Notes under the pieces: model-generated
What the model saw: the letters and a program-made list of their open reading frames with translations, nothing else
What the model was told of the DNA's origin: nothing
Database searches by the model: none
Made by a program: the position numbers and the translations under genes
Shown: one piece after another, positions 1 to 51,803 of the stretch
Position numbering within the stretch: the stretch's first letter is position 1
Layout of the letters: every line of letters begins with the position of its first letter
Assembly: GCF_006345805.1 (NCBI RefSeq)
Contig: NW_021833890.1
Location: 1-52,918, forward strand
From: Octopus sinensis
Lineage: Eukaryota
Length of the DNA stretch: 52,918 bases
Reading direction: 5' to 3'

Positions 1-280
1 AAAGATAAACGATGAACTTTCGAGAGAACGTGAAATAACTCTTATTTTGGAACTGGATCTCGACGCACATAAAGTTATAAATAAAAAAAATATGCAAATA
101 TTGGGAAAAATAGAAAAATTCGGATGCTACCCTTTTACAGAGGATGTGGTTGTATATCCCATGGGTAGTCTTCGACTTTTTCAATCTAAAGATATTTTTC
201 AATCCAATGTTTACATACTATTATTATAGCTTTATGAGCTTCGAGTTTCACTGTTCCGAAAAAGAATCATAAATATATAT

Positions 281-450
281 AGGCGCACGCTGTGTGGTAA
301 GAAGCTTGCTTCCCAACCACATGGTTCCGGGTTCAGTTGCAGTGCGTGGCACCTTGGGCAAGTGTCTTCTACTATAGCCACGAGCCGACTAAAGCCTTTT
401 GACTGGATTTGGCAGATAGAAACTAAAAGAAGCCCATCGTATAATATATA
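281..450 (+). mobile_element. SINE family A, head+body fragment (tRNA-derived)
   Basis: Degenerate A/B-box head (TGTGTGGTAAG...GGGTTCAG), then GGCACCTTGGGCAAGTGTCTTCTACTATAGCC body shared with more than 10 copies in the window. Confidence 0.85.
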
Positions 451-795
451 TATATATATATATAGAATATATATTATTATATATATATATATATAATATA
501 TATATATATAATATAAATATATATATATCAATACATATAAATGGAACAAAACGCAATAGAGGACATTAAAACATTCGGACAGATAGACGGACAGAGAAAC
601 AACAATTAGAAGGACAGGCAAAAAAGACGGGACATTCGTGGCTTTCTTTCTCTCATTCAAGTCCCTGAAGTCACCACCATTACGGGCAGTTACACTTGAG
701 ATAGGTCGATCCGGTTACCCTCCCAAAAAGTCTAAGAGCCATTAGACCCCTTTGTACGAAAGCTGACTGAAACAAGTAAAAAGAATGAGAGATAT

Positions 796-847
<52 letters not shown>

Positions 848-949
848 TATATATATACATACTACATACATATATATATATATATATATACATTATATAT
901 ATATATATGTCTATATGTATTAATTATTTTCATATGTATAAATAACTGG

Positions 950-1180
950 TTCTCTATCGGTTACGACGTTGAATGTTACAGTTGATCCGATGAATGGAAC
1001 AGCTTGCTTCTGAAATTGACGCGTAAGTGGCCGAGCACTCCACAGACAAGCGTACTCTTAACGTAGCCGACTGGGAGATTCAGTGTGACTCAGAATGTGA
1101 CAAGCCTGGACCCCTTCGAATTACTGGTACAACTCATTTTTGCCAGCTGAGTGGACGGGAGCAGCGCGAAATACAGCGCC
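950..1180 (-). mobile_element. SINE family E, 5'-truncated (core + tail 1)
   Basis: Reverse complement matches 5100-5345 (CACTCAGCTGGCAAAAATGAGTTGTACC...GATCAACTG...CGTAACCGA). Confidence 0.8.
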
Positions 1181-1492
1181 TTCGCGAAGTTAGCCATCGA
1201 AGTTGAACTCAGCTTGAAATCCTCCCCAAAATACACCGTTGATGAGCATGATTTAAAGTATTTGCTGTTATACATTAATTCCTTCCAAGATGATGCATAG
1301 TTAGTTAGAGAGATAAAAGCTTAGTGGTACATGTTTGTCCAAATTGCTACAGTTAAAGTCATGAAGTTTGTAATTTTCATATTCGGAAATGATTACATTA
1401 AATATGTGTGCGCTTGAGTGTTTACATGTCTGTGTTTTTGTGTGCAGGCTTGCGTATGCGTGAGTGTATCAGTCTGCGTGGACGTGTGTATG

Positions 1493-1533
<41 letters not shown>

Positions 1534-1661
1534 TGTGTGTGTTGTGTGTGTGTGTGTGTTGTGTGTGTGTTTGTGTGTGTGTGTAGATTTTTCTGGGTTG
1601 TCATTTTGTGGTGATTTGCAATTTTGGATTAGTTTGTAATGTATCAATTTCTTAAAAGTTC

Positions 1662-1830
1662 AAGGCGGTGAGCTGGCAGAATCGTTAGCACGTCAGAATT
1701 GGCAGAATTTCGTCCACTTTTACGTTCTGAGTTCATATTCCACCGAGGTCGACGTCGCCTTTCATCCATTCGTTGTCAGTAAAATAAATACCAGTTTGAA
1801 TAGCCCTCTCCGCACCTTGAGGCCTATAGC
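1662..1830 (+). mobile_element. SINE family C
   Basis: AAGGCGGTGAGCTGGCAGAATCGTTAGCA head, GAGTTCA B-box-like motif, CCGAGGTCGAC...CCTTTCATCC body. Confidence 0.8.
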
Positions 1831-2004
1831 AGGAATAATTACTTATTGCAAATACATCACCGCCGGCCCAATGCATTTCGCTTTCTGCTTACAGAGGTTC
1901 CTTGTAAGTTGTTCATCTGTATTATAAGCATGCAGTAGTTTGTTTATGCAACACACTTCATGTACAATTTTTTTCTTTTTGTCTTCACTATATCTTGATA
2001 GTGT

Positions 2005-2383
2005 GAAGACACAATGGCCCAGTGGTTAGGGCAGCGGATTCGCGGTCGTAGGATCGCGGTTTCGATTCCCAGACCGGGTGCTGCGAGTGTTTATTGAGCG
2101 AAAACACTTAAATCTCCACGAGGCTCCGGTAGGGGGTAGTGGCAAATCCGGCTGTACTTTTTCACCACAACTTTCTATCACTCTTTCTTCCTGTTTCCTG
2201 TTGTACCTGTACTTCAAAGGGGCCAACCTTGTCACACTCTGTCACGCTGAACCTCTTTCAGAACTACGTTAAAAGTACACGTGTCTGTGGAGTGCTCAGC
2301 TATTTACACGTTAATTTCACGAGCAGGCTTTTCCGTTGATCGGATCAACTGGAACCCTCATCGTCGTAACCGACGGAGTGCCA
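2005..2383 (+). mobile_element. SINE family D, full length (tail 1)
   Basis: tRNA-like head TGGCCCAGTGGTTAGG...GGTTTCGATTCCC; colinear with 40198-40571 and the minus-strand copies at 38584 and 51446. Confidence 0.9.
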
Positions 2384-3034
2384 CGATCTTGATTGTATTC
2401 TTATATCTACCACATCGTATTTATTTCTTTATTGTTGCATATAATTCGATCTCCTAAATTATTTCTATAAACATTATTGATTAGCTTTTGCCGTATTTGA
2501 TTTCTTCCTGCGGATCTCCTTTCTTAGTCAACAATCTAAACGCCATGCTACGTAACGAGTTTTATAACTGGATATTTTATATGTTGTGGATATTCTCACC
2601 CTCTACGCATGCGTACTCATTTAATGACGATTTTAGTGTACATTCATGTATGCCAACATGTCGTACCTTAATCTTTCCCTTTTATATCTAAAATAAGGTT
2701 GTTCAATGGCGAGAATTTTATCGGAGCTCATTTGGGTATTAAAAGGGGAAAGACTAATCCACAATCTAGTTTAACAACATCCACAATAAATGATGCATGT
2801 TTTCAGCGGAATCCGCCCCAATGCAAACACGAACATCAGGTTTCACGTTTTAGGATACTTGGGTAATCACCATCCATGTATTCGACTCTCTCTCTCTTCC
2901 CCTCTCTCTCCCTCCCTCTCTCCCTCCCCCTCTCTCTCCCTCCCTCTCTCTTTCTGTCTACCCACCTCTCCCTCTCTTTCCCTGCCGTAGTTTCAGCTCT
3001 GACGCACCCAGTGATAATCGTTTATCTTCTATGT

Positions 3035-3235
3035 TTTACTTGTTTCAGCCATTTGACTGCGGTCATACTGGGGCACCAACCTTGATGAATTTTTAGTCGA
3101 ACGAAGCGATACCAGTACTTAAATTTGTTCCCCTCTCATCCTGGTATTTATTCGATCGGACCCTTTTGCCGAACCGCTAGATTACGGGGACATAACCACC
3201 TGTTATCAAGCGGTGGATGGAGGAGAAACACACAC
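3035..3235 (-). mobile_element. SINE family A, 3' half
   Basis: TTACTTGTTTCAGCCATTTGACTGCGG...GCCGAACCGCTAG tail segment. Confidence 0.8.
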
Positions 3236-3291
3236 ATTCACACATAACAACAATAATAAATAAATAAATATATATATATATATATATGTAC

Positions 3292-3445
3292 AGGCGCAGG
3301 AGTGGCTGTGTGGTAAGTAGCTTGCTTGCCAACCACATGGTTCCGGGTTCAGTCCCACTGCGTGGCATCTTGTCTTCTACTATAGCCTCGGGCCGTTTAA
3401 AGCCTTGTGAGTGGATTTGGTAGAGGAAACTGAAAGAAGCTTGTC
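3292..3445 (+). mobile_element. SINE family A, head+body
   Basis: GGCGCAGGAGTGGCTGTGTGGTAAG...GGGTTCAGTCCCACTGCGTGGC. Confidence 0.85.
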
Positions 3446-3454
3446 ATGTATATG

Positions 3455-3516
<62 letters not shown>

Positions 3517-3524
3517 CCACAGTA

Positions 3525-3608
3525 GAAAACACTTTCCCAATGTGGAACGCAGTGGGACTGAACCTGTTACTACGAGGTTGTGAAGTACGCTTCTTGTCAC
3601 ACAACCAC
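3525..3608 (-). mobile_element. SINE family A, degenerate head
   Basis: ACGCAGTGGGACTGAACC...CACACAACCAC. Confidence 0.6.
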
Positions 3609-4034
3609 TGAAATTCTTTTCAAACATGTTCTGTAGTTGGTCGACATTTTCTTGGACAATTGACACAGGGTATACACTCACTACATACCCTCTATACGAA
3701 CCTTCTGTTGGACAAGAAAGCGTTGAATAAATGAATAGTCACGACACAGCCCACCCGTTGTGTATTCAAGCTGCCTTTTGGATGAATAGGGTCCGTAGCA
3801 CCTGAATCTTTTCGCCTTGATTTTACTGGCGGTGTCAACCGAGAGAATAAGGGGCAAGCTTTATAAAATATAAGACTTTAAAACATATAGTACGTTCGAC
3901 TAAACTTTTCAAAGTTGGAACCCTAGCATGGACGCCGTCCAATGACTGAGACAAATAAAATGTGTCATGCATATTGATTTCAAATTATGTCACAAAGCCA
4001 GCGATTCCGGGGTGGGGTGGGGGAGTAGCTAAAT

Positions 4035-4240: not shown

Positions 4241-4620
4241 ACGGCGAGGTGGCAGAAACACTAGCACGCCGGGCGAAATGATTAGCGGTATTTCGTCTGC
4301 CGTTACGTTCTGAGTTCAAATTCTGCCGAGGTTGGCTTTGCCTTTCATCCTTTCGGGGTCGATTAAATGAGTAATAGTTACGCACTGGAGTCTATGTAAT
4401 CGACTTAATCCGTTTGTCTGTCCTTGTTTGTCCTCTCTGTGGGTAGTAAAGAAATGGGTATTTCATCTGCCGTTACGTTCTGAGTTCAAATTCCGCCGAG
4501 GTCGACTTTACCTGCTATCCTTTCAGGATCGATAAATTAAGTACCAGTTGGGGTCGATCTAATCGTCTGGCCCCCACACAAAAATTTCAGGTTTTGTGCC
4601 TAGAGTAGAAAGGATTATAA
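4241..4620 (+). mobile_element. SINE family C dimer (full monomer + 5'-truncated monomer)
   Basis: GGTATTTCRTCTGCCGTTACGTTCTGAGTTCAAATT occurs twice, at about 4287 and 4457; same layout at 22877-23228. Confidence 0.8.
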
Positions 4621-7020: not shown

Positions 7021-8207
7021 CAGGGTGCATAAGATATTTGAGGACAGATTTGTGTTTATAAAAAAACAGCTATATAATACCAGATAACTTTATCAAAAAA
7101 TGGTATAGGGATAAAAAATAAATCTTCTTTTCTATAATGTTATTCATTAAAGCCACCTTCAGCTTCAACAACTGCTTCTATATGAGATTTAAATCATCTA
7201 CATGCTTGAATCAAATGGTCCTGGTTAATTTTGGACATTACTCTGACTATGGCAGCTTTCAAAGAATCTTTGGTGTTATGGGCATGTTCATTGACCTCTC
7301 TCTCTCAACAGCGCTCCACATGTAATAGTCCAATGGATTGAGATATGAGAAATTATGAGGCCAAATGTTAGAGGTTATGTGATTAAGAAAATTTTCAGCC
7401 ATCCATTCCTGTGTTACTAGAGCCATGTGTGATAGTGCAGAGTCTTACTGAAACACATATGGCCTTCTATCTAGAACTTAACAATTATTTCCAGGACCTT
7501 AATGTAGACGGCAGAGGTAGAAAGGAGTAAGGAGGCATCACATGACCTTTATTGCTGACAACCCCTAAACCCATGACAGTTGCAGGAAATTTTCTATGCA
7601 TAACACTTGGAACTTCAGAAGGGTCTGAACATAACCATCTATCATTACATCTCTTAACTTTTTGATCTTGGTCGAAGTTTTTCTCGTTTGAGAAAAACCA
7701 AATCAAATCTTCTTCTGCCGGATTTTTCAGTGTGTTTAAGAGCCTTTTAGATCTGGTGTAGTGATTTTCTGTTGCTTTTTCTGACAAATTGATCTTTCCT
7801 CATCATATTAGACTTGTATCTGACTGTTCCTTCTGACACACAGAGATCTTTTGCAATTGACCTCATGAACTTTCTGGGATTGTAATCAATGGTCTGTTGA
7901 ACTTGCTGGATAAACTCAAGTGTTTTGATGATTTCAGAGCATTTAGAATGCTTTTCATACTTTGATACAGGTGATACGTTTTCATCTTCAGTCTCTATCT
8001 CCTTACAAACTTTGTAGAAGAAAGATCTGGCAACTTTAAAAAATCGCGATATCTCTAAATCGCTACGGTCAATAATCGAATGCCTTTTCATTTCTTGAGT
8101 AAGCTGAGGGTCTGCAATTATTATTTCCTAAAAAAATTTATACAGAGTTAGCAAAAACTGCGGCAATGACCCAAAATGGTATGTCCTCAAATACCTTACG
8201 CACCTTG
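7021..8207 (-). mobile_element. Tc1/mariner superfamily DD37D (maT-type) transposon, full length, decayed
   Basis: 26-bp TIRs at 7021-7046 and 8182-8207 (23/26). Broken transposase across ORFs 7747-8091 and 7485-7787 plus a manual translation (FQ*DSALSH...WPHNFSYLNPLDYYMW) with 37 residues between the 2nd and 3rd D. Confidence 0.92.
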
Positions 8208-8561: not shown

Positions 8562-8948
8562 TTATTTGTTTCAGTCATGTGACTGCGGCCATACTGGAGC
8601 ACCACCTGAAGATGCTTTAGTCGAACAAATCGATCTCGGGACTTATTCTTTGTAAGCCTAGTACTTACTTATCCTATCGGTCTCTTTTGCTAAACTGCTA
8701 TGTTACGAGGACATAAGCACACCAACATTGGTTGTCAAGCGATGGTGGTGGTGGTGTGGTGCGGCAAACACAGAAAAAGATTCATATATATATACGACGG
8801 GATTCTTTCAGTTTCCGTCTACCAAATCCACTAACAAGGTTTTGGTCGGCCTGAGGCTATAGTAAAAGACACTTGACCAAGGTGCCACGCAATGGGACTG
8901 AACCCAGAACCATGTGGATGGGAAGCAAGATTCTTACCACACAGCCAC
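8562..8948 (-). mobile_element. SINE family A, full length
   Basis: Head at about 8895-8948, body, short internal (TA)n, tail ending TGACTGAAACAAATAAAAGAA. Confidence 0.85.
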
Positions 8949-8959
8949 GCATGCATATG

Positions 8960-14514: not shown

Positions 14515-14877
14515 TTTACTTGTTTCAGTCATTTGACTGTGGCCATACTGGAGCACCGCCTTTAATCTTTGTAAGCCCAGTACTTATTCTATCGGTCTCT
14601 TTTTGCCGAACCGCTAAGTGACGGGAACATAAACACACCAGTATCGGTTGTCAAGCAATGCTAGGGGGACAAACACAGACACACAAACATACACACACAC
14701 ATATATATATATATACATATATTCGACAGGCTTCTTTCAGTTTCCGTCAACCAAATCCACTCATAAGGCATTGGTCGGCTATAGCAGAAGACACTTGCCC
14801 AAGATGCCACGCAGTGGGACTGAACCGGGAACCATGTGGTTGGTAAGCAAGCTACTTACCACACAGCCACTCCTGCA
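14515..14877 (-). mobile_element. SINE family A, full length
   Basis: Complete head, body, internal (CA)(TA) tract and tail. Confidence 0.9.
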
Positions 14878-16973: not shown

Positions 16974-17640
16974 ATCATCATCATCATCATCATTATTGCC
17001 TTTGCACAGCTTCTAACTCTGGAGATGTTCTCTAGTGTCAGCTGTTCACTATCAGTGAACTAAGGTAATACATCTTATTATTCGAGCACCTTCCAGAGTA
17101 TTCGAGCGGTTCCAAGCAGTGCTGTTTTCTGTAAGTGCTCCACTCTTATTGCAGCCCCTATTTATTCCACTATTCCCAGGCCTCTGACAATTATTGGTAC
17201 TACTGCTACCTTTTTCATCGACCACAACTGCTTAACTTCCTAAGCTAACCTGTCATATCTCTCGACTTTTCTTTCTTCCTTATCGCATATCTTGCTGTCA
17301 AGTGGACATGCTATATCTATGATTCAGCATAGTTTGTTTTCTTCCTCAATTAACACTATGTCCGGCTTCCTATTCTCTATTTCATGGTCGCACTGAATCA
17401 TAAAATCTCATAGGATATTTGCATTATCATTTTCGATTATGCTTTCAGGTTTATGTTTTTACAACTTTTTTGCTCTGTCGAGTCCATACTTATTGCAAAG
17501 TGTCCAATAGACAAGCCTGGCTATATTGTTGTGGCGTCACTTATATTCCTTCTGGGCTAGTGGCGTACATTGGCCGGTAATATGCTATACGCTTTCACCA
17601 TTTTGTCCACAAATTCTGCACTTTCTGATGTGTTGTCTAT
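16974..17640 (-). mobile_element. R4/Dong-clade non-LTR retrotransposon, 5'-truncated and decayed (copy 2)
   Basis: Manual translation with stops: KCRICGQNGESV*HITGQC (CCHC), RHNNIA, ENRKPDIVLIEEENKLC*IIDIACP...KVERY (restriction-like endonuclease), LQKTALLGTARIL; (TGA/TAA)n tail. Confidence 0.9.
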
Positions 17641-17664
17641 ATTATTATTATTATTATTATTATT

Positions 17665-18218
17665 GAGTGAGAGAGAAGTGCATGCCATCAAAGTGACACT
17701 GGGGTAAAATATACGAAGCACAATATACCCGTCATGACTACCCGTCTGATAAAGGTACACCAGGCACATGCATCACAACCATATGTGCGCGACATGGTGA
17801 TCTCATATCAAGATAAACAGCACATGACCTTGCAGGTGGAGCCCAGTTAGAATTTTCTTCAGGTTGAGTAGCCCATCCCGCTCAAAAGGTCCCTGAATAA
17901 GGGTTGTTTAAGGATGTTGAACGAACCACCCATGTTTCCAGAGGTGAATTATTCAAACCCCAAAGAATCCCTCTCAACACATGACTATGATGCTCCCCCA
18001 CTACTTCTGCTCGTGATCAGAGATGCACATATCGTCAGCCACTAAGGGACATGCTCAACTGGTTAAGGTCAAACAACTGACAAAAAAATCTGTGGTATTG
18101 AGCAGAATATTTACTGTAGCCCATCTTTAATACCAAGACAAAACAATGTACATGATAACACTTCCAATCAGTTAAGATCAGAAGCCATGAGAGCCACTGC
18201 CTGGTACTGCATCAGGGC

Positions 18219-18220
<2 letters not shown>
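17665..18220 (-). mobile_element. Element G copy 1 (555-bp, (TAA)n-embedded, non-coding)
   Basis: Near-identical to three other copies; ATT arrays on both sides; strand assigned by the TAA strand. Confidence 0.85.
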
Positions 18221-18249
<29 letters not shown>

Positions 18250-18805
18250 GAGTGAACGAGCAGAGCATGCCATCAAAGTGACACTGGGGTAAAATATACG
18301 AAGCCCAATATACCCATCATGACTACCCGTCTGATAAAGGTACACCGGGCACATGCATCACAACCATATGTGCGCGACATGGTGATCTCATATCAAGATA
18401 AACAGCACATGACCTTGCAGGTGGGGCCCAGTTAGAATTTTCTTCAGGTTGAGTAGCCCATCCCGCTCAAACGGTCCCTAAATAAGGGTTGTTTAAGGAT
18501 GTTGAAAGAACCACCCATGCTTCCAGAGGTGAACTATTCAAACTCCAAAGAATCCCTCTCAACACATGGCTATGATGCTCCCCCACTACTTCTGCTCGTG
18601 ATCAGAGATGCACATATCGTCAGCCACTAAGGGACATGCTCAACTGGTTAAAGTCAAACAACTGACAAGCAAATCTGTGGTATTGAGCAGAATATTTGCT
18701 GTAGCCCATCTTTTATGCCAAGACAAAACAATGTACATGATAACACTTCCAATCAGTTAAGATCAGAAACCATGAGAGCCACTGCCTGGTACTGCATCAG
18801 GGCAT
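18250..18805 (-). mobile_element. Element G copy 2 (tandem), with its terminal ~29 bp duplicated at 18806-18834
   Basis: Direct repeat of copy 1, separated by about 30 bp of (ATT)n. Confidence 0.85.
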
Positions 18806-18831
18806 AGCCTCTGCCTGGTACTGCATCAGGG

Positions 18832-18833
<2 letters not shown>

Positions 18834-18883
<50 letters not shown>

Positions 18884-18943
18884 GTTGTTGTTGTGTTGTT
18901 GTTATTATTGTTGTTGTTGTTGTTGTTGTTATTATTATTGTTG

Positions 18944-18975
<32 letters not shown>

Positions 18976-18982
18976 TTTGTTG

Positions 18983-19014
<32 letters not shown>

Positions 19015-19129
19015 GTTGTTGTTGTTATTATTATTATTATTATTATCATTATTATTATTATTATTATTATTATTACTACTACTATTATTATTATTATCAA
19101 TATTATTATTATTATTATTATTATTATTA

Positions 19130-19166
<37 letters not shown>

Positions 19167-19281
19167 TATTATTATTATTATTATTATCATCATATTATTA
19201 TTATTATTATTATTATTACAACTATTATTATTATTATTATTATCTTTATTATTATTATTATTATTAATATTATTATTACTA

Positions 19282-19354
<73 letters not shown>

Positions 19355-19387
19355 CATTATTATATATTATTATTATTATTATTATTA

Positions 19388-19427
<40 letters not shown>

Positions 19428-19470
19428 CATCATTATTATTATTCTTATTATTATATTATTATTATTATTA

Positions 19471-19524
<54 letters not shown>

Positions 19525-19544
19525 TATTATTATTATTATTATTA

Positions 19545-19632
<88 letters not shown>

Positions 19633-19666
19633 CATTATTATTATTATTATATTATTATTATTATTA

Positions 19667-19748
<82 letters not shown>

Positions 19749-19756
19749 CATTATTA

Positions 19757-19795
<39 letters not shown>

Positions 19796-19877
19796 CATAT
19801 TATTATTATTATTATATTATTATTATTATTATTATCATTATTATTATTATTCTTATTATTATTATTATATATTATTA

Positions 19878-19934
<57 letters not shown>

Positions 19935-19940
19935 TATTAT
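18834..19940. repeat. ~1.1-kb imperfect (ATT)n array with GTT/CAT/ACT variants
   Basis: Directly visible; source of the poly-Y/I/L ORFs. Confidence 0.95.
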
Positions 19941-22876: not shown

Positions 22877-23228
22877 GCGGGGGGAGTTGGCAGAAACGTT
22901 AGCCCGCCGGGCGCAAATTCCGCCGAGGTCGACTTTGCCTTTCATCCTTTCGGGATCGATTAAATAAGTACCAGTTACGCACTGGGGTCGATATAATTGA
23001 CTTAATTCGTCTGTCTGTCCTCTCTGTGTTTAGCCCCTTGTGGGTAGTAAAGAAATAGGTATTTCGTCAGTCTTTACGTTCTGAGTTCAAATTCAGCCAA
23101 GTTCGACTTTGCCTTTCATCATTTCCGGGTCGATAAAATAAGTACCAGTCATGCACTGGGGTTGATGTAATCGATTAGCCCCCTTACCTCCCTACCCAAA
23201 TTTTCAAAGCCTTGTGCCTAGTGTAGAA
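22877..23228 (+). mobile_element. SINE family C dimer
   Basis: Same monomer junction (AAAGAAATRGGTATTTC) as 4241-4620. Confidence 0.8.
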
Positions 23229-23261
23229 ATAATGATAATAAGTAATAACAAGGTTAAACCT

Positions 23262-23639: not shown

Positions 23640-23851
23640 TCTTTTCTACTCGGGGCACAAGGCCCGAAATTTTTGGAGAGGGGTCCAGTCGATTAGATCG
23701 ACCCAAGCAACGGGTACTTAATTTATTGACTCCGAAAGGATGAAAGGCAAAGTCGACCTCGGCGGAATTTGACCTTAGAACGTAAAGACAGACGAAATAC
23801 AGCTAAGCATTTCGCCCGGCGTGTTTACGTTTCTGCCAGCTCGCCGCCCTA
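23640..23851 (-). mobile_element. SINE family C
   Basis: GGATGAAAGGCAAAGTCGACCTCGGCGGAATTTGA...CTGCCAGCTCGCCGCC. Confidence 0.85.
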
Positions 23852-23869
23852 TATTAACGTAAATATACG

Positions 23870-26377: not shown

Positions 26378-27618
26378 TCAGGTTGTTTCACACGAAATGT
26401 CTCATTTTTAATTACTTGTTATTTCAGTCATTTAAAAACTCAATTATGTAAACCCTTGCATCTAATCCTGACTCTTTTTCTTTCCCAACAATATTGGTAT
26501 ACAAAATTCGTACCCACAGACCTTATGAAAATAATAACAACCAAAATATGTTGAGTGATTTGCTCGTATGAGTACAAACTGGGTCACTCTGTCGCAGAAG
26601 CTCTACGGAATATCAAGCGGGCCTTTGGTAATGGTTTTGTTGATACTAGAATTATTCAGAGATGGTTCCAAAGCTCTCGTTTAGGAGATGATAACCTTAA
26701 AAATAAACCAAGGGCTAGGCCAAAATCAGTTATTCGGCATGATGGATTAAACGCTTTGGTTGAACAAAATCCGAGAACAAAGGTTCGAACACTTTCATCA
26801 GAACTCCAAACATCTCGCACAACTGTTTTGGACACCTGTAAAAAATTGGAAAAAAATCAAGAAAACGGATAGGTTTGTTCCACATCAACTGAACGAGATC
26901 CAAAATAACAGACGCTTCGAAGTGTGCTCCTTATTGCTTTCTCAACTGGAAGAAGACCATTTTTGCATCAAATCATTACTTGTGATGAGAAATGGATACT
27001 CTTTGACAACAGCAGGAGAACAGAACAGTGATTAGATGCTGGACAGTCACTTAAACACTACCCAAACCCACCATTGCACCCTAAAATGTTAGTGTCCACT
27101 GCATGGTGGTCTGCGAAGGGGGTTATTCATTATTCATTTTTGCAAAAAGGAACAACGGTAACAGCAACATCGTACTGCCAGGAAATTGATTGTATGCATG
27201 AGAATTTGAAAAAGAAGCAACCCAGACTAGTGAATAGAGATGGCCCAAGTTCGCTCGACGACAATGCACGTCCTCACACTCCTCAAGCTACGGTCCAAAA
27301 GTTGCAAAGCCTAACTTATGAGATTTTGCAACATTCCCTTTATTCCACTGATATCTCTCCTACTGACCATCACTTATTTTAACATTTTTGAGCTTTTCAC
27401 AAGCAATAAGACATTCTTAAACAGAGAAAAGGAATTTGAAGCATTCGGAAAGTTTATCACAGAAAAAGATGAATAGACATCGAGAATCGTTGGGAAAACG
27501 TCATAAAGGAACATGGGTCATACTTTGTTTTTTTTTAAAAAAAATCAGTTCTCTAACACTTCTGAAACATTTCAAATTGTTACCTTTCAAATACGATATT
27601 CCATGTGAAACAACCTAA
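26378..27618 (+). mobile_element. mariner DD34D transposon, full length, decayed (resembles Hsmar1/cecropia type)
   Basis: TIRs TCAGGTTGTTTCACACGAAAT / ATTCCATGTGAAACAACCTAA, TA on the left. Frameshifted transposase: N-terminal HTH (26555-26872), FVPHQL, ITCDEKW, DNARPH-x-YSTDISPTD with 34-residue D-D spacing. Confidence 0.93.
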
Positions 27619-29892: not shown

Positions 29893-30441
29893 CAGGGTGC
29901 CCACTGAAAAACTGTAGGGTTTGAAAAAGTCATAACTTATTTGTTTCAAATCTTATTAATTTTTTTGCTTTTATTTTGCATGTTACAGAGCATGCTTTGG
30001 AGATTAAAATGGCTACATGTGATGTAGAGCAACGAGTAAAACTCCTTAAGTTTTTCCTTTCCAGTGAAAGATCAATTATTCAAACTCAGAGAGAATACCG
30101 GCAATGTTTTACTGTCTCCTAGCGATAGCATGATTCGAAACCTAATCGCCCGGTTTGAAAGAAATGGATCAGTCGGGAATCTTCCGGGAAGTGGTTCTAA
30201 GTGCATTGCGAGCACTGACGCAGTGGTGGGAGGTGTACGGCAGGGTGTCCTTGGGGATCCATCAGTCTCTTCCCGTCGTCGCTCTGCTCAATTAGGCATC
30301 ACCAGAACATCTCTTCAGAAGATTCTGAAACTCGATTTTAAAATGCTTCCATCCAAATAAAATTTTAAAAAATATAGAAGATCTTATGTTTGTAAAAGTT
30401 ATTAATGTTTTATATCATTCAGTCTTTCAGTGGCCACCCAG
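29893..30441 (+). mobile_element. Internally deleted Tc1/mariner-superfamily element
   Basis: TIRs CAGGGTGCCCACTGAAAAACTG / CAGTCTTTCAGTGGCCACCCAG, TA on the right; ORF 30064-30360 is a transposase N-terminal HTH (RFERNGSV...PSVSSRRRSAQLGITRTSLQKILK). Confidence 0.85.
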
Positions 30442-30789: not shown

Positions 30790-32198
30790 GTTCGAGCAGT
30801 CCTGAAGTCTGAGCTGAATGCATATAATAAGGTGTTAGCCATAAATCAGTACCAGTTGTTCTTTATAGCTTCAATGTACTTAACTGGAATATCAGTGAAA
30901 TAATGAAAATTGACTGAAAAATCCGCAAGCTACTGACTTGTAATAAGATGCACCATCCAAAGGCAGACGTGAATCGCCTTTACCTTCCCAGAGCTCAGGG
31001 AGGTCGAGGTTCGATCCAGCTTGAACTTACATACAAAACCACCACAATCGGACTGGCCAAATACCTTGAAGCAACCAACGATTGGATGCTAAAATTTGTT
31101 GAAAACATGAAAGACAGAAAAAAACTTCATTCTATTCTCAAAGAGAGCAAAGATTTCGCTGCTTATCTCTTAGATACCCACTAGATTGATCAGGTTGAAG
31201 GAAATGCGCCAACTGCAGCTGCAAAGAAAAGAAAATTAATTGCAAAGACAAAAGCACATGAAAATTTAGCTAGCAGATGGGAGCAGAAACCTCTTCATGG
31301 CAAGTATGTGGCCCGTAGCAAACAAGCTGATGTCGACCAGAAACACACGCACAAATGGTTTCGGAGCTCAGGGCTAAAAGCAGAGAGTGAAGGTTTCATA
31401 TTAGCTGCTCAAGACCAAAGCTTATTAACCCGGAACTACCAAGCCAATGTAATAAAAAATGGAGCTGACCCTAAATGCCGATTCTGTAACGATGAGATTG
31501 AAACAATAGACCACCTAATCTCAGGGTGTAGAGTCTTAGCACCTGCAGAATATAAAGCAAGACATGACAGAGTCGGCCAGTATTTACATTGGACAATATG
31601 TCGGCATTATAAAATCAAAACCGCTGACAAATGGTATAAACACCATCCTGAAGCTGTGACTGAGGGAGAAAATGTGTCGATTCTATGGGACTTCCCCGTA
31701 CAGAACTATAAAAGCTAATAAACCGGATATTATTATAAAAGATCAGACAAAAAAGATGTGTTTATTAATTGACATGAGTATTCCTTGCGATCACAATATA
31801 GCGGCGAAAGAATTTGACAAGATTAGTAAATATAAAGACTTGCTAATAGAAATTGAAAAAATGCGGCATCTCAAGGCGACTACAGTACCAGTGATTGTAG
31901 GATCTCTAGGAATGATAAAAAAAGGTACTGAAACCTATTTGAAAATGATTCCAGGCTTACCATCCTTACAGGAAGTGCAAAAATCGTGTTAACTGGAACG
32001 GCTCGTGTACTGAGAAGAGCATTATCGCTGTGAAAACAACATCCATCCATGAATTTATTTATTTATTAATTTTTAAATGCATATTTTATCTGTGAATCTG
32101 CGCGTGTAATCTTGGAATGCACACAATGAAGTTCTCTACCCTAGGTGTACGGAAAACACTCGGCGAGAAACGGAAGAAAATTTGAAGAAAGGAAAAAC

Positions 32199-32199
<1 letters not shown>
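30790..32199 (+). mobile_element. R4/Dong-clade non-LTR retrotransposon, 5'-truncated (copy 1)
   Basis: RT thumb (LKSELNAYNKVLAIN...HHPKADVNRLYLPRAQGGRG), AAQDQSL, CCHC knuckle CRFC...DHLISGC, RHD, NKPDII...IDMSIP...KISKY endonuclease; (TAA)n on both flanks. Confidence 0.95.
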
Positions 32200-32245
<46 letters not shown>

Positions 32246-32328
32246 TATAATAATAATAATAATAATAATAGTAGTAGTTTAGTAGTAGTAGTAGTAGTAG
32301 TAGTAGTAATAACAATAATAATAATAAT

Positions 32329-32362
<34 letters not shown>

Positions 32363-32363
32363 C

Positions 32364-32413
<50 letters not shown>
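32200..32413. repeat. (TAA)n/(TAG)n/(CAA)n array
   Basis: Directly visible; tail of Dong copy 1. Confidence 0.9.
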
Positions 32414-32414
32414 G

Positions 32415-32966
32415 TGCCCTGATGCAGTACCAGGCAGTGGCTCTCATGGCTTCTGATCTTAACTGATTGGAAGTGTTATCATGTACATTGTTTTGTCTTG
32501 TGGTATAAAAGATGGGCTACGCAAATATTCTGCTCAATACCACAGATTTTTTTGTCAGTTGTTTGACCTTAACCAGTTGAGCATGTCCCTTAGTGGCTGA
32601 CGATATGTGCATCTCTGATCACGAGCAGAAGTAGTGGGGGAGCATCATAGCCATGTGTTGAGAGGGATTCTTTGGGGTTTGAATACACACCTCTGGAAAC
32701 ATGGGTGGTTCGTTCAACATCCTTAAACAACCCTTATTCAGGGACCTTTTGAGCGGGATGGGCTACTCAACCTGAAGAAAATTCTAACTGGGCTCCACCT
32801 GCAAGGTCATGTGCTGTTTATCTTGATATGAGATCACCATGTCGCGCACATATGGTTGTGATGCATGTGCCTGGTGTACCTTTATCAGACGGGTAGTCAT
32901 GATGGGTATGGGCTTCGTATATTTTACCCCAGTGTCACTTTGATGGTATGAACTTCTCTCTCACTC
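32415..32966 (+). mobile_element. Element G copy 3
   Basis: TGCCCTGATGCAGTACCAGG...CTCTCTCACTC between TAA arrays. Confidence 0.85.
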
Positions 32967-33139
<173 letters not shown>

Positions 33140-33195
33140 GTGACAACAAAAGAATGAGACCTCGATATTAGATAAATAGAGGATTATTTATATAT

Positions 33196-33675
33196 GTTAT
33201 AATTTAGAACAAACAGTAAAAGCTTGTCATTATAGTACTCGGAGTTTCGAATGCCGGAGCGAAGAACTACAATATATTCTCGTCGGCTATGTATGAGTAC
33301 GTACATACATGTATGATTGTGTGTGTGTACATGTACGCATACATGTTTGGGTGAGTGTGTACGCATGCAGACTTTGTGAACGTAGGAGGTTTATGTCTAC
33401 GTATTGCGAGAATATGGCTGCGTATATTTTAAAATCTTTTTTCTTTTTCTATCTATTAGATTTAATTCCCTTTTATCTAACGGTTTTTTCATAGCATCCG
33501 GGTACTATAATGACAACATGTTACTGTTTACATTATTTACATTATTTACATTTGACGATATTTGTCCTCATCTTGTTTGTTGTTAACGGGCATATAGCTT
33601 AGTGGTTAAGAGCGCGGGCTACTAACCACAAGATTCCGATTTCGATTCCAGACTGTGACCTGAATAATAATAATA

Positions 33676-33741
<66 letters not shown>

Positions 33742-33937
33742 CATCGAAAAATACCTTAGGAATGAGAACCCAAGTTCGAAATTTCCCCAACACACCTCAT
33801 GAAGGCTGGAGGGTATATCAGCCGAAATGTGTTAACAAACAAGATGAGGTCAAATATCCGTCAAATGTAAATTATGTAAATAATGCATATAATTCCTCAT
33901 CTCTTAAATATAGAACTGTTACTGTTTGTTCTGAATT

Positions 33938-33942
<5 letters not shown>
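33196..33942. mobile_element. MITE-like element with ~50-bp inverted arms; right arm split by an insertion
   Basis: Left arm GTTATAATTTAGAACAAACAGTAAAAGCTTGTCATTATAGTACTCGG; right arm rebuilt from 33495-33529 plus 33928-33942; a solo arm lies at 13805-13855. Confidence 0.7.
33530..33916 (+). mobile_element. tRNA-headed element with Penelope-like hammerhead tail and inverted arm
   Basis: 11-bp TSD TGTTACTGTTT (33519-33529, 33917-33927); head 33588-33660; (AAT)n; decayed hammerhead 33792-33832; 33530-33587 is an inverted copy of 33831-33885. Confidence 0.75.
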
Positions 33943-33989
<47 letters not shown>

Positions 33990-33990
33990 A

Positions 33991-34196
33991 ACGAGGACTG
34001 ATCAAAAAATATTAGGGCTGGTGCAGGAGTGGCTGCGTGGTAAGTAGCTTGCTTACCAACCACATGGTTTCGGGTTCAGTCCCACTGCATGGCACCTCGG
34101 GCAAGTGTCTTCTACTATAGCCTCAGGCCGACCAAAGCCTTGTAAGTGGATTTGGTAGACGGAAACTGAAAGAAGCCCGTGGTACATATGTATATG

Positions 34197-34237
<41 letters not shown>

Positions 34238-38583: not shown

Positions 38584-38969
38584 TGGAAGCACTCCGTCGG
38601 TTACGACGACGAGGGTTACGGTTGATCCGAATCAACGGAACAGCCTGCTCGTGAAATTAACGTGTAAGTGGCTGAGCACTCCACAGACACGTGTACCCTT
38701 AACATAGTTCTCGGGGATATTCAGCGTGACACAGAGAGTGACAAGGCCGGCCCTTTGAAATACAGGTACAACAGAAACAGGAAGTAAGAGTGAGAGAAAG
38801 TTGTGGTGAAAGAGTACAGCAGGGATCACCACCATCCCCTGCCGGAGCCTCGTGGAGCTTTTAGGTGTTTTCGCTCAATAAACACTCACAACGCCCGGTC
38901 TGGGAATCGAAACCGCGATCCTAGGACCGCGTGTCCGCTGCCCTAACCACTGGACCATTGCGCCTCCAC
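38584..38969 (-). mobile_element. SINE family D, young full-length copy
   Basis: 11-bp TSD CATATATATGT (38573-38583, 38970-38980). Confidence 0.93.
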
Positions 38970-40040: not shown

Positions 40041-40197
40041 TAAATTATCTTAAAAAGTAATTTTTAATCGAAAACATTTCTAAACGATGAACTTTTATCT
40101 TACCTTATATATTATATATTTATAAGTTTCCTATATATATGTATATTTATATATTTCCTTATATTTTTATATATATGTATTATTCTAGATGTTATAA

Positions 40198-40571
40198 CGC
40201 AATGGCCCAGTGGTTAGGGCAGCGGACTCGCGGTCATAGGATCGCGGTTTCGATTCCCAGACCGGGCGTTGTGAGTGTTTATTGAGCGAAAACACCTAAA
40301 GCTCCACGAGGCTCCGGCAGGGGATGGTGGGATCCCTGCTGTACTCTTTCACCACAACTTTCTCTCACTCTTACTTCCTGTTTTCTGTTGTACCTGTGTT
40401 TCAAAGGCCGGCCTTGTCACTCTGTGTCCACGCTGAATATCCCCGAGAACTACGTTAAGGGTACACGTGTCTGTGGGTGCTCAGCCACTTACACGTTAAT
40501 TTCACGAGCAGGCAGTACCGTTGATTCGGATCAACCGAACCCTCGTCGTCGTAACCGACGGAGTGCTTCCA
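40198..40571 (+). mobile_element. SINE family D, young copy
   Basis: Near-identical to the reverse complement of 38584-38969; ATAACGC on both flanks. Confidence 0.93.
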
Positions 40572-47310: not shown

Positions 47311-47381
<71 letters not shown>

Positions 47382-47382
<1 letters not shown>

Positions 47383-47936
47383 GCCCTGATGCAGTACCAG
47401 GCAGTGGCTCTCATGGCTTCTCATCTTAACTGATTGGAAGTGTTATCATGTACGTTGTTTTGTCTTGGTATAAAAGATGGGCTACAGCAAATATTATGCT
47501 CAGTACCACAGATTTGCTTGTCAGTTGTTTGACCTTAACCAGTTGAACATGTCCCTTAGTGGCTGACGATATGTGCATCTCTGATCATGAGCAGAAGTAG
47601 TGGGGGAGCATCATAGCCATGTGTTGAGAGGGATTCTTTGGGGTTTGAATAGTACACCTCTGGAAACATGGGTGGTTCTTTCAACATCCTTAAACAACCC
47701 TTATTCAGGGACCGTTTGAGCGGGATGGGCTACTCAACCTGAAGAAAATTCAAACTGGGCCCCACCTGCAAGGTCATGTGCTGTTTATCTTGATATGAGA
47801 TCACCATGTCGCGCACATATGGTTGTGATGCATGTGCCTGGTGTACCCTTATCAGACGGGTAGTCATGATGGGTATACTGGGCTTCGTATATTTTACCCC
47901 AATGTCACTTTGATGGCATGAACTGCTCTCCCACTC
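47382..47936 (+). mobile_element. Element G copy 4
   Basis: Same ends as the other copies; (TAA)n on both sides; no adjacent LINE. Confidence 0.85.
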
Positions 47937-47998
<62 letters not shown>

Positions 47999-48442: not shown

Positions 48443-48635
48443 GGCGAAACGCTTAGCGGTATTTCGTCTGTTTACTTTCTGAGTTCAAATTCCGCCGAGG
48501 TCGACTTTGCCTTTCATCCGTTCGGGGTCGATTAAATAAGTACCAGTTACGCACTGGGGTCGAGGTAATCGACTTGAATCCCTTTGTATGTCCTTGCTTG
48601 TCCTCTCTGTGTTTAGCCCCTGTAGGCCATAAATA
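48443..48635 (+). mobile_element. SINE family C monomer, 5'-truncated
   Basis: GCTTAGCGGTATTTCGTC...CCTCTCTGTGTTTAGCCCC. Confidence 0.85.
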
Positions 48636-48760
48636 AATATATATATATGTTTGTATGTATGTGTGTGTGTGTATACATACACACACATATGTATGTATAT
48701 GTGTATATATGTGTTTGTATGGGAATAAATGTGTGTGTATATATATATATGTGTGTGTGG

Positions 48761-51445: not shown

Positions 51446-51803
51446 TTTTTTTTTTTTGGAAGCACTCCGTTGGTTACGACGACGAGGGTTCCGGTTGATC
51501 CGATCAACGGAACAGCCTGTTCGTGAAATTAACGTGTAAGTGGCTGAGCACTCCACAGACACGTGTACCCTTAACGTAGTTCTCGGGGATATTCAGCGTG
51601 ACACAGAGGGTGACAAGGCCGGCCCTTTGAAATACAGGTACAACAGAAACAGGAAGTAAGAGTGAGAGAAAGTTGTGGTGAAAGAGTACAGCAGGGATCA
51701 CCATCATCCCTGCCGGAGCCTCGTGGAGCTTTAGGTGTTTTCGCTCAATAAACACTCACAACGCCCGGTCTGGGAATCGAAACCGCTGGGCCATTGCGCC
51801 TCC
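51446..51803 (-). mobile_element. SINE family D, young copy with poly(A) tail and a head deletion
   Basis: 13-bp TSD ACGGAAGTGATCC (51433-51445, 51804-51816); T12 run; about 34 bp of the tRNA head missing. Confidence 0.93.

What the first reader, a model, noticed from the sequence alone, without database searches (positions are those of the whole stretch)
17665..18834. Element G: unidentified 555-bp non-coding element confined to (TAA)n, candidate non-autonomous partner of Dong
Seen: four full-length, closely similar copies (17665, 18250, 32415, 47382) with the same ends. All lie between TAA arrays in the same orientation relative to the TAA strand, and three neighbour a co-oriented Dong. I see no ORF, TIR, tRNA A/B box, or shared 3' UTR with either Dong copy here. 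One end forms a hairpin GCCCTG-ATGCAGTAC-CAGGC, which is duplicated at 18806-18834, as expected from a template jump. Inference: a SINE-like RNA with a discrete 5' end and unknown promoter that hijacks a site-specific Dong endonuclease/RT. It may already be in repeat libraries as an unclassified family.
Basis: partly seen in the sequence, partly recalled or inferred. Interest (0 to 1): 0.75.

Follow-up and report, generated by a model that had tools for sequence, protein, structure and literature searches.

The report
TAA-microsatellite-specific non-coding octopus repeat
A 555-bp non-coding repeat sits four times in this octopus window, always inside TAA microsatellites and always oriented like the Dong-type jumping genes beside it. 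It is most likely a small parasite copied by Dong's enzymes, but the usual hallmarks of such a parasite were not found.

Summary
There are four 552-555-bp copies at 17665-18219 (-), 18250-18804 (-), 32415-32966 (+) and 47382-47936 (+). They are 95.2-97.1% identical and have the same ends. Each is flanked on both sides by (TAA)n, in one orientation relative to the TAA strand. That is also the orientation of the two decayed, 5'-truncated Dong-like LINE fragments (16998-17641 -, 30792-32199 +). A 28-nt copy of the 5' end is repeated upstream of copy 2.

G is non-coding. It has no Pfam match, Rfam match, tRNA, TIR or detectable HDV-like ribozyme, and no similarity to either local Dong 3' UTR.

Translated G fragments occur in at least 10 Octopus bimaculoides gene models. 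Two of these cross a G end into a run of residues consistent with a TAA array in the same orientation.

Shared variants group G1 with G3 and G2 with G4, so the adjacent pair G1/G2 is not a local duplication.

The best reading (about 0.5) is a non-autonomous retroposon copied by a Dong-type endonuclease/reverse transcriptase, primed through a read-through (UAA)n tail. It is not a classical SINE and not a demonstrable R2-SIDE analogue. Gene conversion between TAA arrays is the main rival. No octopus genome was searchable, so the decisive census could not be run.

The parts
17665..18219 (-). G1, a full-length copy (555 bp). Its sense strand is the - strand.
   Evidence: Flanked by (TTA)n on the + strand at 17642-17662 and 18221-18247.
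18250..18804 (-). G2, a full-length copy (555 bp).
   Evidence: Belongs to the G2/G4 subtype by 6 shared variants.
18806..18833 (-). Extra copy of G positions 1-28 (TGCCCTGATGCAGTACCAGGCAGAGGCT), joined directly upstream of G2's 5' end.
   Evidence: TRF period 29, 2.0 copies, 96% match. Also seen in the alignment and by direct reading.
32415..32966 (+). G3, a full-length copy (552 bp, with small indels).
   Evidence: TAA arrays at 32316-32413 and 32969-33139.
47382..47936 (+). G4, a full-length copy (555 bp). It sits alone in a short TAA array with no Dong nearby.
   Evidence: TAA arrays at 47312-47380 and 47939-47995.
47836..47883 (+). Hairpin specific to the sense strand in G's 3' region (13-bp stem GCCUGGUGUACCY / GGGUAUAYUGGGC). 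It is a candidate recognition structure. Coordinates are for G4; the same hairpin is present in the other copies.
   Evidence: The 3' 150 nt fold with z = -2.1 on the sense strand (4 of 200 shuffles do as well) and -0.65 on the antisense strand. Three of five variants inside the stem turn a G-U pair into G-C (my reading). With four sequences this is not significant.
16998..17641 (-). Dong-A, a 5'-truncated and decayed LINE of the restriction-like-endonuclease (RLE) type. It keeps the CCHC knuckle and the PD...D...K endonuclease region, has in-frame stops, and is co-oriented with G1/G2.
   Evidence: Translation. 102 homologues, best E = 1e-67. tblastn maps them to 17081-17623 on the - strand. 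The 3' end runs into (AAT)2(GAT)6.
30792..32199 (+). Dong-B, a second and divergent 5'-truncated Dong-like fragment. TAA-type repeats flank it on both sides, and it is co-oriented with G3.
   Evidence: tblastn to 30984-32030. Open segments with a frameshift near 31703. Weak zf-RVT match, E = 9.5e-5. Junctions read.
18834..19940 (-). 1.1-kb (TAA)n array with GTT variants, written as (ATT)n on the + strand. It lies upstream, in G sense, of G2, G1 and Dong-A and is the target array they occupy.
   Evidence: TRF period 3, 372 copies.
32200..32413 (+). (TAA)n array with TAG and CAA variants, lying between the 3' end of Dong-B and the 5' end of G3.

Best explanation
G is a non-autonomous, non-coding retroposon specific for (TAA)n microsatellites in an octopus genome. 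It is copied in trans by a Dong-type (R4-clade, restriction-like endonuclease) LINE.

Proposed cycle:
1. A G copy is transcribed on its TAA-sense strand, and transcription runs on into the TAA array that always follows it. The RNA therefore ends in (UAA)n.
2. The Dong endonuclease nicks the TTA strand of another TAA array.
3. The nicked (TTA)n end anneals to the (UAA)n tail and primes reverse transcription. A sense-strand hairpin about 55-100 nt from G's 3' end may help the enzyme recognise the RNA.
4. The cDNA runs to G's fixed 5' end. Occasional template jumps add a second, partial copy of the 5' end upstream.
5. Second-strand synthesis leaves G inside the array, in the same strand orientation as Dong.

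What is shown: the copies, their ends, their confinement to TAA arrays, their orientation, the subtype structure and the 5' duplication. What is inferred: every enzymatic step, the identity of the partner, and how the discrete 5' end of the RNA is made.
For: - Four copies have identical ends and all lie inside TAA arrays, which cover 3.9% of the window.
- All four have the same orientation relative to the TAA strand. This is also the orientation of both Dong fragments, whose 3' ends abut (TAA)n.
- Two O. bimaculoides gene models cross a G end into a run of L or I residues consistent with (TTA)/(ATT), in the same orientation (P0109, P0105).
- Six informative sites group G1+G3 against G2+G4. Three group the neighbours G1+G2. 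So the tandem pair came from two insertions of different subtypes into one array, not from a local duplication.
- G4 sits alone in a short array with unique flanks. Sequence beyond the arrays is unrelated between loci.
- G2 carries an extra 28-nt copy of its 5' end. O. bimaculoides models P0103 and P0106 read from G's 5' end into G position about 136. A reverse transcriptase that jumps template at the RNA 5' end would produce this, as is known for R2 (established knowledge).
- G is non-coding and multi-copy in Octopus.
- The 3' region folds better on the sense strand than on the antisense strand.
- Octopus carries Dong-family LINEs with a full-length consensus (PMC9115989).
Against: - G has no similarity to the 3' UTR of either Dong copy in the window. 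R2-type proteins normally recognise their own 3' UTR.
- No HDV-like ribozyme was detected at either end by Rfam at E<=10, by a strict descriptor or by a relaxed one, which scored no better than shuffles. Bombyx Dong has such a ribozyme at its TAA junction (PMC3774820). How G RNA gets a fixed 5' end is therefore unexplained.
- The window holds no 5'-truncated G copy, which would be the usual signature of target-primed reverse transcription.
- Only four DNA copies could be examined.
- Dong showed no sign of recent activity in O. bimaculoides (PMC9115989).
- The 'Dong' label on the two neighbours rests on the CCHC plus PD..D..K C-terminus and on the TAA context. It was not tested by phylogeny. 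The PDB match to R2 protein is only E = 0.95.
Confidence: 0.5

Rival explanations
1. G spreads at the DNA level, with no reverse transcription. A break in one TAA array is repaired using another TAA array that already contains G, through ectopic gene conversion or synthesis-dependent strand annealing. The homologous TAA flanks carry G across. Orientation relative to the TAA strand and both boundaries are then preserved automatically.
For: This explains confinement to TAA, the fixed orientation and the identical ends without needing a ribozyme or a shared 3' UTR. It fits all four copies being full length, the lack of similarity to Dong 3' UTRs and the absence of a ribozyme.
Against: It does not predict extra partial copies of the 5' end only. 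It gives no reason for the sense-strand bias in folding. Gene conversion would be expected to carry the Dong fragments along in the same way, yet each of those is unique in the window. At least 10 gene models in O. bimaculoides contain G, which suggests a copy number high for passive conversion.
Confidence: 0.15
2. G is an internally deleted Dong, an analogue of the R2 'SIDE' elements. It would be the 5' UTR and 3' UTR of an octopus Dong subfamily that is not represented in this window, and that subfamily's protein would mobilise it by recognising its own 3' UTR.
For: G has the same target and orientation as Dong. The two Dong fragments here are very different from each other (no nucleotide match; 3' UTRs unrelated), so further subfamilies are likely. 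A full-length Dong consensus exists for O. bimaculoides (PMC9115989). SIDEs are the known precedent for a parasite of an endonuclease-type LINE (PMC3774820).
Against: The 5' ribozyme that defines SIDEs, and that Bombyx Dong carries, was not detected. No G frame resembles any protein family or the start of a Dong ORF. The UTRs of the candidate parent could not be obtained.
Confidence: 0.15
3. G belongs to another class of mobile DNA that happens to favour TAA. The candidates are a solo LTR, a PIF/Harbinger-type MITE (TAA/TTA target duplication) and a Helitron-like element. G would have nothing to do with Dong.
For: G begins with TG and can be read as ending in CA if the first A of the array is counted. 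PIF/Harbinger elements duplicate TAA (PMC2213677). The antisense strand ends in a short hairpin that is duplicated in G2, and Helitrons sometimes carry repeated 3' ends (my knowledge).
Against: There are no terminal inverted repeats. The Helitron termini TC...CTRR are absent on both strands (direct reading). Neither an internal retrotransposon region nor paired LTRs are present: G1 and G2 are 30 bp apart, and I did not scan the 14 kb between G3 and G4 for gag/pol domains, noting only that one search lists just four ORFs of at least 150 aa there and that it is rich in SINE-like repeats and microsatellites. None of these classes predicts a single orientation relative to the TAA strand in 4 of 4 copies plus 2 octopus gene models.
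Confidence: 0.05
4. G is a retroposon, but it is driven by some other TAA-targeting reverse transcriptase, such as another endonuclease-type LINE clade or a Penelope-like element. The Dong fragments are merely fellow tenants of the same arrays.
For: Nothing in G's sequence ties it to Dong. Several LINE clades contain microsatellite-specific families (PMC4640811).
Against: The only coding elements seen inside TAA arrays here are the two Dong-like fragments. No hammerhead or other ribozyme typical of Penelope-like elements was found.
Confidence: 0.1

Closest known systems
R2 SIDEs (short internally deleted elements of Drosophila; Eickbush & Eickbush 2012, described in PMC3774820)
   Same: Short, non-coding parasites of a LINE that carries a restriction-like endonuclease. 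They insert at exactly the LINE's own target, in the LINE's orientation, with variable 5' junctions.
   Different: SIDEs keep the LINE's 5' HDV-like ribozyme and its 3' UTR. G shows neither a detectable ribozyme nor similarity to the Dong 3' UTRs available. Its target is a microsatellite, not 28S rDNA.
Dong (R4 clade), the (TAA)n-specific LINE first found in Bombyx mori
   Same: Same target repeat and same strand orientation. The 3' end abuts (TAA)n. G shares arrays with Dong copies.
   Different: Dong encodes a reverse transcriptase and endonuclease, and in Bombyx it starts with a self-cleaving ribozyme (PMC3774820). G encodes nothing and is only 555 bp.
Classical SINEs with a LINE-derived or simple-repeat tail
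   Same: Short, non-coding, multi-copy, with subfamily structure, and dependent on a LINE's enzymes.
   Different: G has no tRNA, 7SL, 5S or snRNA head. Its sense strand carries Pol III terminator-like T-runs. Insertion is site-specific rather than dispersed.
Tandem 5' monomers of mouse L1
   Same: Octopus gene models suggest that G's first 136 nt or so can be repeated in tandem upstream of a full copy, as L1 promoter monomers are (my knowledge).
   Different: For G this is inferred only from translated gene models plus one 28-nt case in the window. Promoter activity is untested.

Membership tests
SINE (classical) | 5' head derived from tRNA, 7SL, 5S or snRNA, with an internal Pol III promoter | tested here: not met
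   ARAGORN finds no tRNA in the window. Rfam gives nothing at gathering score or at E<=10 on G3. The sense strand has T4 to T7 runs at positions 77, 132, 333 and 511.
SINE (classical) | 3' tail shared with the partner LINE, or a simple-repeat tail matching the LINE's | tested here: inconclusive
   Local alignment with Dong-A and Dong-B 3' UTRs scores no better than shuffles. However, G, like Dong, is always followed by (TAA)n. Other Dong subfamilies could not be obtained.
SINE (classical) | Short, non-coding, multi-copy | tested here: met
   555 bp. No Pfam match. Stop-codon count is as in shuffles. Four copies here and at least 10 O. bimaculoides gene models containing G.
R2-type SIDE (internally deleted LINE parasite) | HDV-like self-cleaving ribozyme at the 5' end | tested here: not met
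   No Rfam HDV-type family at E<=10. The strict double-pseudoknot descriptor gives 0 hits on both strands of three copies. The relaxed descriptor gives 891 hits against 15-3869 in shuffles. No positive control was available, and a divergent ribozyme could escape these scans.
R2-type SIDE (internally deleted LINE parasite) | 3' UTR identical or similar to that of the autonomous element | tested here: inconclusive
   Not met against the two Dong fragments in the window. Not testable against the full octopus Dong set.
R2-type SIDE (internally deleted LINE parasite) | Same insertion site and orientation as the autonomous element | tested here: met
Dong / R4-clade LINE (autonomous) | ORF with a reverse transcriptase and a C-terminal CCHC plus restriction-like endonuclease | tested here: not met
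   G has no such ORF. The neighbouring fragments Dong-A and Dong-B do carry the CCHC and PD..D..K region. Their clade was not tested by phylogeny.
Solo LTR | TG...CA ends with short inverted termini, and paired copies flanking gag/pol somewhere | tested here: not met
   There are no inverted termini. No coding region lies between co-oriented copies: G1 and G2 are 30 bp apart. I did not scan the 14 kb between G3 and G4 for gag/pol domains; one search lists only four ORFs of at least 150 aa there, and it is rich in SINE-like repeats and microsatellites. Target duplications cannot be read inside a microsatellite.
MITE of the PIF/Harbinger type (TAA target) | Terminal inverted repeats | tested here: not met
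   The only inverted repeat in G is an internal 11-nt pair.
Helitron | 5' TC and 3' CTRR termini, with a hairpin 10-12 nt before the 3' end and insertion between A and T | tested here: not met
   The ends are TGCCC...CACTC on the sense strand and GAGTG...GGGCA on the antisense strand. Neither strand fits.
Satellite / local tandem repeat | Neighbouring units are each other's closest relatives and form head-to-tail arrays | tested here: not met
   Six sites group G1 with the distant G3. Three group it with the adjacent G2. G3 and G4 are solitary.

The most novel reading that the evidence does not exclude
G represents a kind of LINE parasite that needs neither a small-RNA promoter head, nor the LINE's ribozyme, nor the LINE's 3' UTR. 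Its only passport would be a read-through microsatellite tail, (UAA)n, that base-pairs with the nicked (TTA)n target of a microsatellite-specific endonuclease LINE. Any RNA that ends in the right microsatellite could then be copied into that microsatellite. This would give Dong-type elements a way to seed and grow islands of unrelated sequence inside TAA arrays.
Probability: 0.2. Interest if true: 0.65.

Novelty: new variant of a known kind. Interest (0 to 1): 0.42.

Why it matters
Parasites of site-specific, endonuclease-type LINEs are known mainly from the R2 SIDEs of Drosophila. I found no report of a non-autonomous partner for a microsatellite-specific LINE such as Dong in the papers I could search. 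If G is one, it would show how much, or how little, RNA sequence a Dong-type enzyme needs to accept a template. It would also help explain why octopus TAA arrays collect foreign sequence. In practice, G ends up inside octopus gene models as spurious 'proteins', so naming and masking it would clean up annotation. If G is already an unclassified entry in an octopus repeat library, the value is smaller: a classification and a proposed mechanism.

Tried and rejected
External copies of G:
- Exact look-ups of two G ORFs and of P0103 found nothing on record.
- Two metagenome scans and one scan of prokaryote genomes with invariant G motifs gave 0 hits.
- Two ENA contigs carrying Dong-A-like elements (70-73% nucleotide identity) contain no G. 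L002 has no TAA arrays; arrays in L001 were not checked. They therefore gave no comparison and no positive control.
- A third protein search, using the five remaining reading frames of G joined together, saturated at 8000 candidates and returned nothing. That search was wasted.

Ribozymes and known RNAs: Rfam at gathering score and at E<=10, a strict HDV descriptor and a relaxed HDV descriptor were all negative or equal to shuffles. Rfam on the two ENA contigs found no ribozyme either.

Rejected readings:
- G as decayed coding sequence. The most open frame (antisense, 5 stops) is matched by 31% of shuffles, and there is no Pfam match.
- A Pol III A/B box. There are only partial matches, about 120 nt apart in mid-element, plus T-runs.
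- A TATA box at G positions 88-95. It is not conserved in G1 or G2, and it would start transcription inside the element.
- A U1 snRNA-like head. A 13-of-15 match that I saw by eye is not supported by Rfam.
- LTR, MITE, Helitron and satellite. See the membership tests.

The whole-element fold is unremarkable (z = -1.5).

Full report
WHAT IS THERE

Alignment with flanks and direct reading place them as follows:
- G1 at 17665-18219 (- strand)
- G2 at 18250-18804 (- strand)
- G3 at 32415-32966 (+ strand)
- G4 at 47382-47936 (+ strand)

Pairwise identity is 95.2-97.1%.

I call 'sense' the strand on which the flanking repeat reads TAA. On that strand every copy reads ...TAATAA-(A, G or nothing)-TGCCCTGATGCAGTACCAGGCAG ... 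CTC(T/C)CACTC-AATAATAAT.... Perfect TAA/TTA arrays make up 3.9% of the window. Four hits inside them would therefore be about 2e-6 by chance, or 6e-5 if G1 and G2 are counted as one event.

Beyond the arrays the four loci share nothing. G4 sits alone in a short array between unique sequences. Upstream of G2 there is a second copy of G positions 1-28 (18806-18833; TRF period 29, 2.0 copies, 96% match).

THE NEIGHBOURS

The - strand from 17641 down to about 16998 translates in one frame, with in-frame stops. It reads as a CCHC knuckle followed by a PD...D...K region, the C-terminus typical of LINEs with a restriction-like endonuclease. It has 102 database homologues, with a best E-value of 1e-67.

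Mapping those homologues back onto the window finds this piece (Dong-A) and a second, divergent one on the + strand (Dong-B, 30792-32199). Dong-B has a frameshift near 31703.

Both are 5'-truncated. Both are flanked by TAA-type repeats, and their 3' ends abut (TAA)n or a decayed version of it. Dong sense and G sense therefore have the same relation to the TAA strand. G1 and G2 are co-oriented with Dong-A, and G3 with Dong-B.

The name 'Dong' rests on this architecture, on the TAA context and on the report that octopus carries Dong LINEs (PMC9115989). I did not test it by phylogeny. The only PDB sequence match is the R2 protein's zinc-knuckle region at E = 0.95.

WHAT G IS NOT

- Not coding. 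The most open frame has 5 stops and 31% of shuffles do as well. No frame matches Pfam.
- Not a known RNA. ARAGORN finds no tRNA. Rfam finds nothing at gathering score over the window, and nothing relevant at E<=10 over G3.
- Not a good Pol III transcript. The sense strand has T-runs at positions 77, 132 (T7 in G1 and G3), 333 and 511.
- No terminal inverted repeats.
- No Helitron termini.
- Not a local satellite. Six informative sites join G1 to the distant G3 and G2 to G4. Only three join the neighbours G1 and G2.

THE TWO HALLMARKS OF A PARASITE OF AN ENDONUCLEASE-TYPE LINE

Bombyx Dong, like R2 and R4, starts with an HDV-like ribozyme. This ribozyme cuts the co-transcript exactly at the TAA/Dong junction. 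R2's SIDE parasites keep both that ribozyme and the R2 3' UTR (PMC3774820). I tested G for both features.

Ribozyme:
- No Rfam HDV-type family at E<=10.
- A strict double-pseudoknot descriptor placed around the junction gives 0 hits on either strand of three copies.
- A relaxed descriptor gives 891 hits against 15-3869 in shuffles, so it carries no signal.
That is too short to hold the P2 and P3 strands that an HDV fold needs between the two strands of P1.
- I had no positive control. The two Dong-A-like contigs fetched from other species showed no ribozyme; L002 lacks TAA arrays, and L001 was not checked for them.

3' UTR: local alignment of G, on both strands, with the 3' UTRs of Dong-A and Dong-B scores no better than shuffles. 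The two UTRs are also unrelated to each other.

Both hallmarks are therefore unmet with the material at hand. A partner subfamily outside the window remains possible.

EVIDENCE FROM OUTSIDE THE WINDOW

The antisense translation of G matches ten 'uncharacterized proteins' of Octopus bimaculoides at 57-89% identity. This identifies the host as an octopus and shows that G is multi-copy there. These are gene models that have swallowed G fragments.

- Two models cross a G end into a run consistent with TAA repeats. P0109 reads an L-run into G's 3' end, and P0105 reads from G's 5' end into an I-run. Both cases fit the orientation seen here.
- P0103 and P0106 read from G's 5' end straight into G position about 136, through two different junctions. 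This suggests full copies preceded by a partial 5' 'monomer', a longer version of G2's 28-nt duplication.

This last point is inferred from protein sequence only, and splicing in the gene models cannot be excluded.

No octopus DNA could be reached in any collection.

STRUCTURE

- The whole element folds unremarkably (z = -1.5).
- The first 140 nt fold no better than shuffles (z = -0.5).
- The last 150 nt fold better than shuffles on the sense strand (z = -2.1; 4 of 200 shuffles do as well) but not on the antisense strand (z = -0.65).
- The core of that fold is a 13-bp hairpin, at 47836-47883 in G4.
- Three of the five variants inside its stem change a G-U pair to G-C (my reading). With four sequences this is only a hint.

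MECHANISM

The simplest account that covers the shown facts is target-primed reverse transcription by a Dong-type enzyme. These facts are the fixed ends, the confinement to TAA, the strand orientation shared with Dong, the subtype structure, the independent insertions into one array and the extra partial copies at the 5' end only.

Every G copy is followed by a TAA array. A read-through transcript would therefore end in (UAA)n and could pair with the nicked (TTA)n strand. That pairing might replace recognition of a specific 3' UTR, and the 3' hairpin may contribute.

All of this is inference. The origin of the discrete 5' end of the RNA is unexplained. The proposed 5' monomers could hint at a promoter, but this is untested.

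The strongest rival is copying between TAA arrays by homologous repair. It explains the target, the orientation and the constant ends without any enzyme of Dong. It does not explain the 5'-only duplications or the apparent copy number. A SIDE-type origin from an unseen Dong subfamily is a special case of the main reading.

VERDICT

G works like a Dong passenger, yet it fails or cannot be scored on the defining features of both SINEs and SIDEs. I rate it as a new variant of a known kind, with moderate interest. It may already exist as an unclassified consensus in octopus repeat libraries, which I could not consult.

Noticed in passing
window 33140-33739: A 524-bp unique stretch lies between two co-oriented (TAA)n arrays, just downstream of G3. 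It ends in a tRNA-like sequence (33590-33664, with A-box-like TAGCTTAGTGGTTAAGAGC and B-box-like GATTTCGATTCC) that runs directly into (AAT)n. ARAGORN and Rfam do not call it a tRNA. It could be another passenger of the TAA array or a SINE head.
   Followed up: partly
window 33195-33943: Several long inverted repeats (25-33 nt arms, 88-96% complementary) bracket the tRNA-like piece and a TAA array. This suggests a foldback or palindromic element that has been interrupted.
   Followed up: partly
window 26555-27379 (+): Decayed mariner/Mos1-type transposase: HTH_48 (E = 9.5e-10) and Transposase_1 (E = 3e-18).
   Followed up: yes
window 29925-30357 (+): Open segments with a DUF4817 helix-turn-helix domain (E = 4e-7), probably the N-terminus of another transposase, just upstream of Dong-B.
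   Followed up: partly
window, many sites (e.g. 289-463, 8784-8955, 14701-14867, 34032-34208; and 2001-2381, 38589-38969, 40197-40566, 51462-51786): At least two abundant families of short dispersed, SINE-like repeats are scattered through the window in both orientations, at 70-97% identity. They are unrelated to G and were not classified here.
   Followed up: no
window 22914-23231: A 174-bp unit repeated 1.8 times in tandem (74% match), related to dispersed SINE-like copies at 4317-4620, 23640-23857 and 48443-48639.
   Followed up: no
O. bimaculoides proteins P0103-P0112 (UniProt A0A0L8...): Ten annotated 'uncharacterized proteins' are partly translations of the antisense strand of G. P0108 looks like a real protein whose C-terminus runs into a G copy. 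P0110 joins G to the start of a LINE reverse transcriptase. These appear to be annotation artefacts caused by an unmasked repeat.
   Followed up: partly
window 17642-17662 and 18221-18247: The spacers between Dong-A and G1 and between G1 and G2 are only 7-10 TAA units, while a 1.1-kb array lies beyond G2. Successive insertions seem to land a few repeat units upstream of the previous element's 5' end. This may reflect where the endonuclease cuts relative to an array edge.
   Followed up: no
loci L001, L002 (ENA contigs ERZ26692762, ERZ25066843): Elements 70-73% identical in nucleotide sequence to Dong-A occur in other, unidentified species. L002 has no TAA array near them, so relatives of Dong-A may not all be TAA-specific.
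   Followed up: partly
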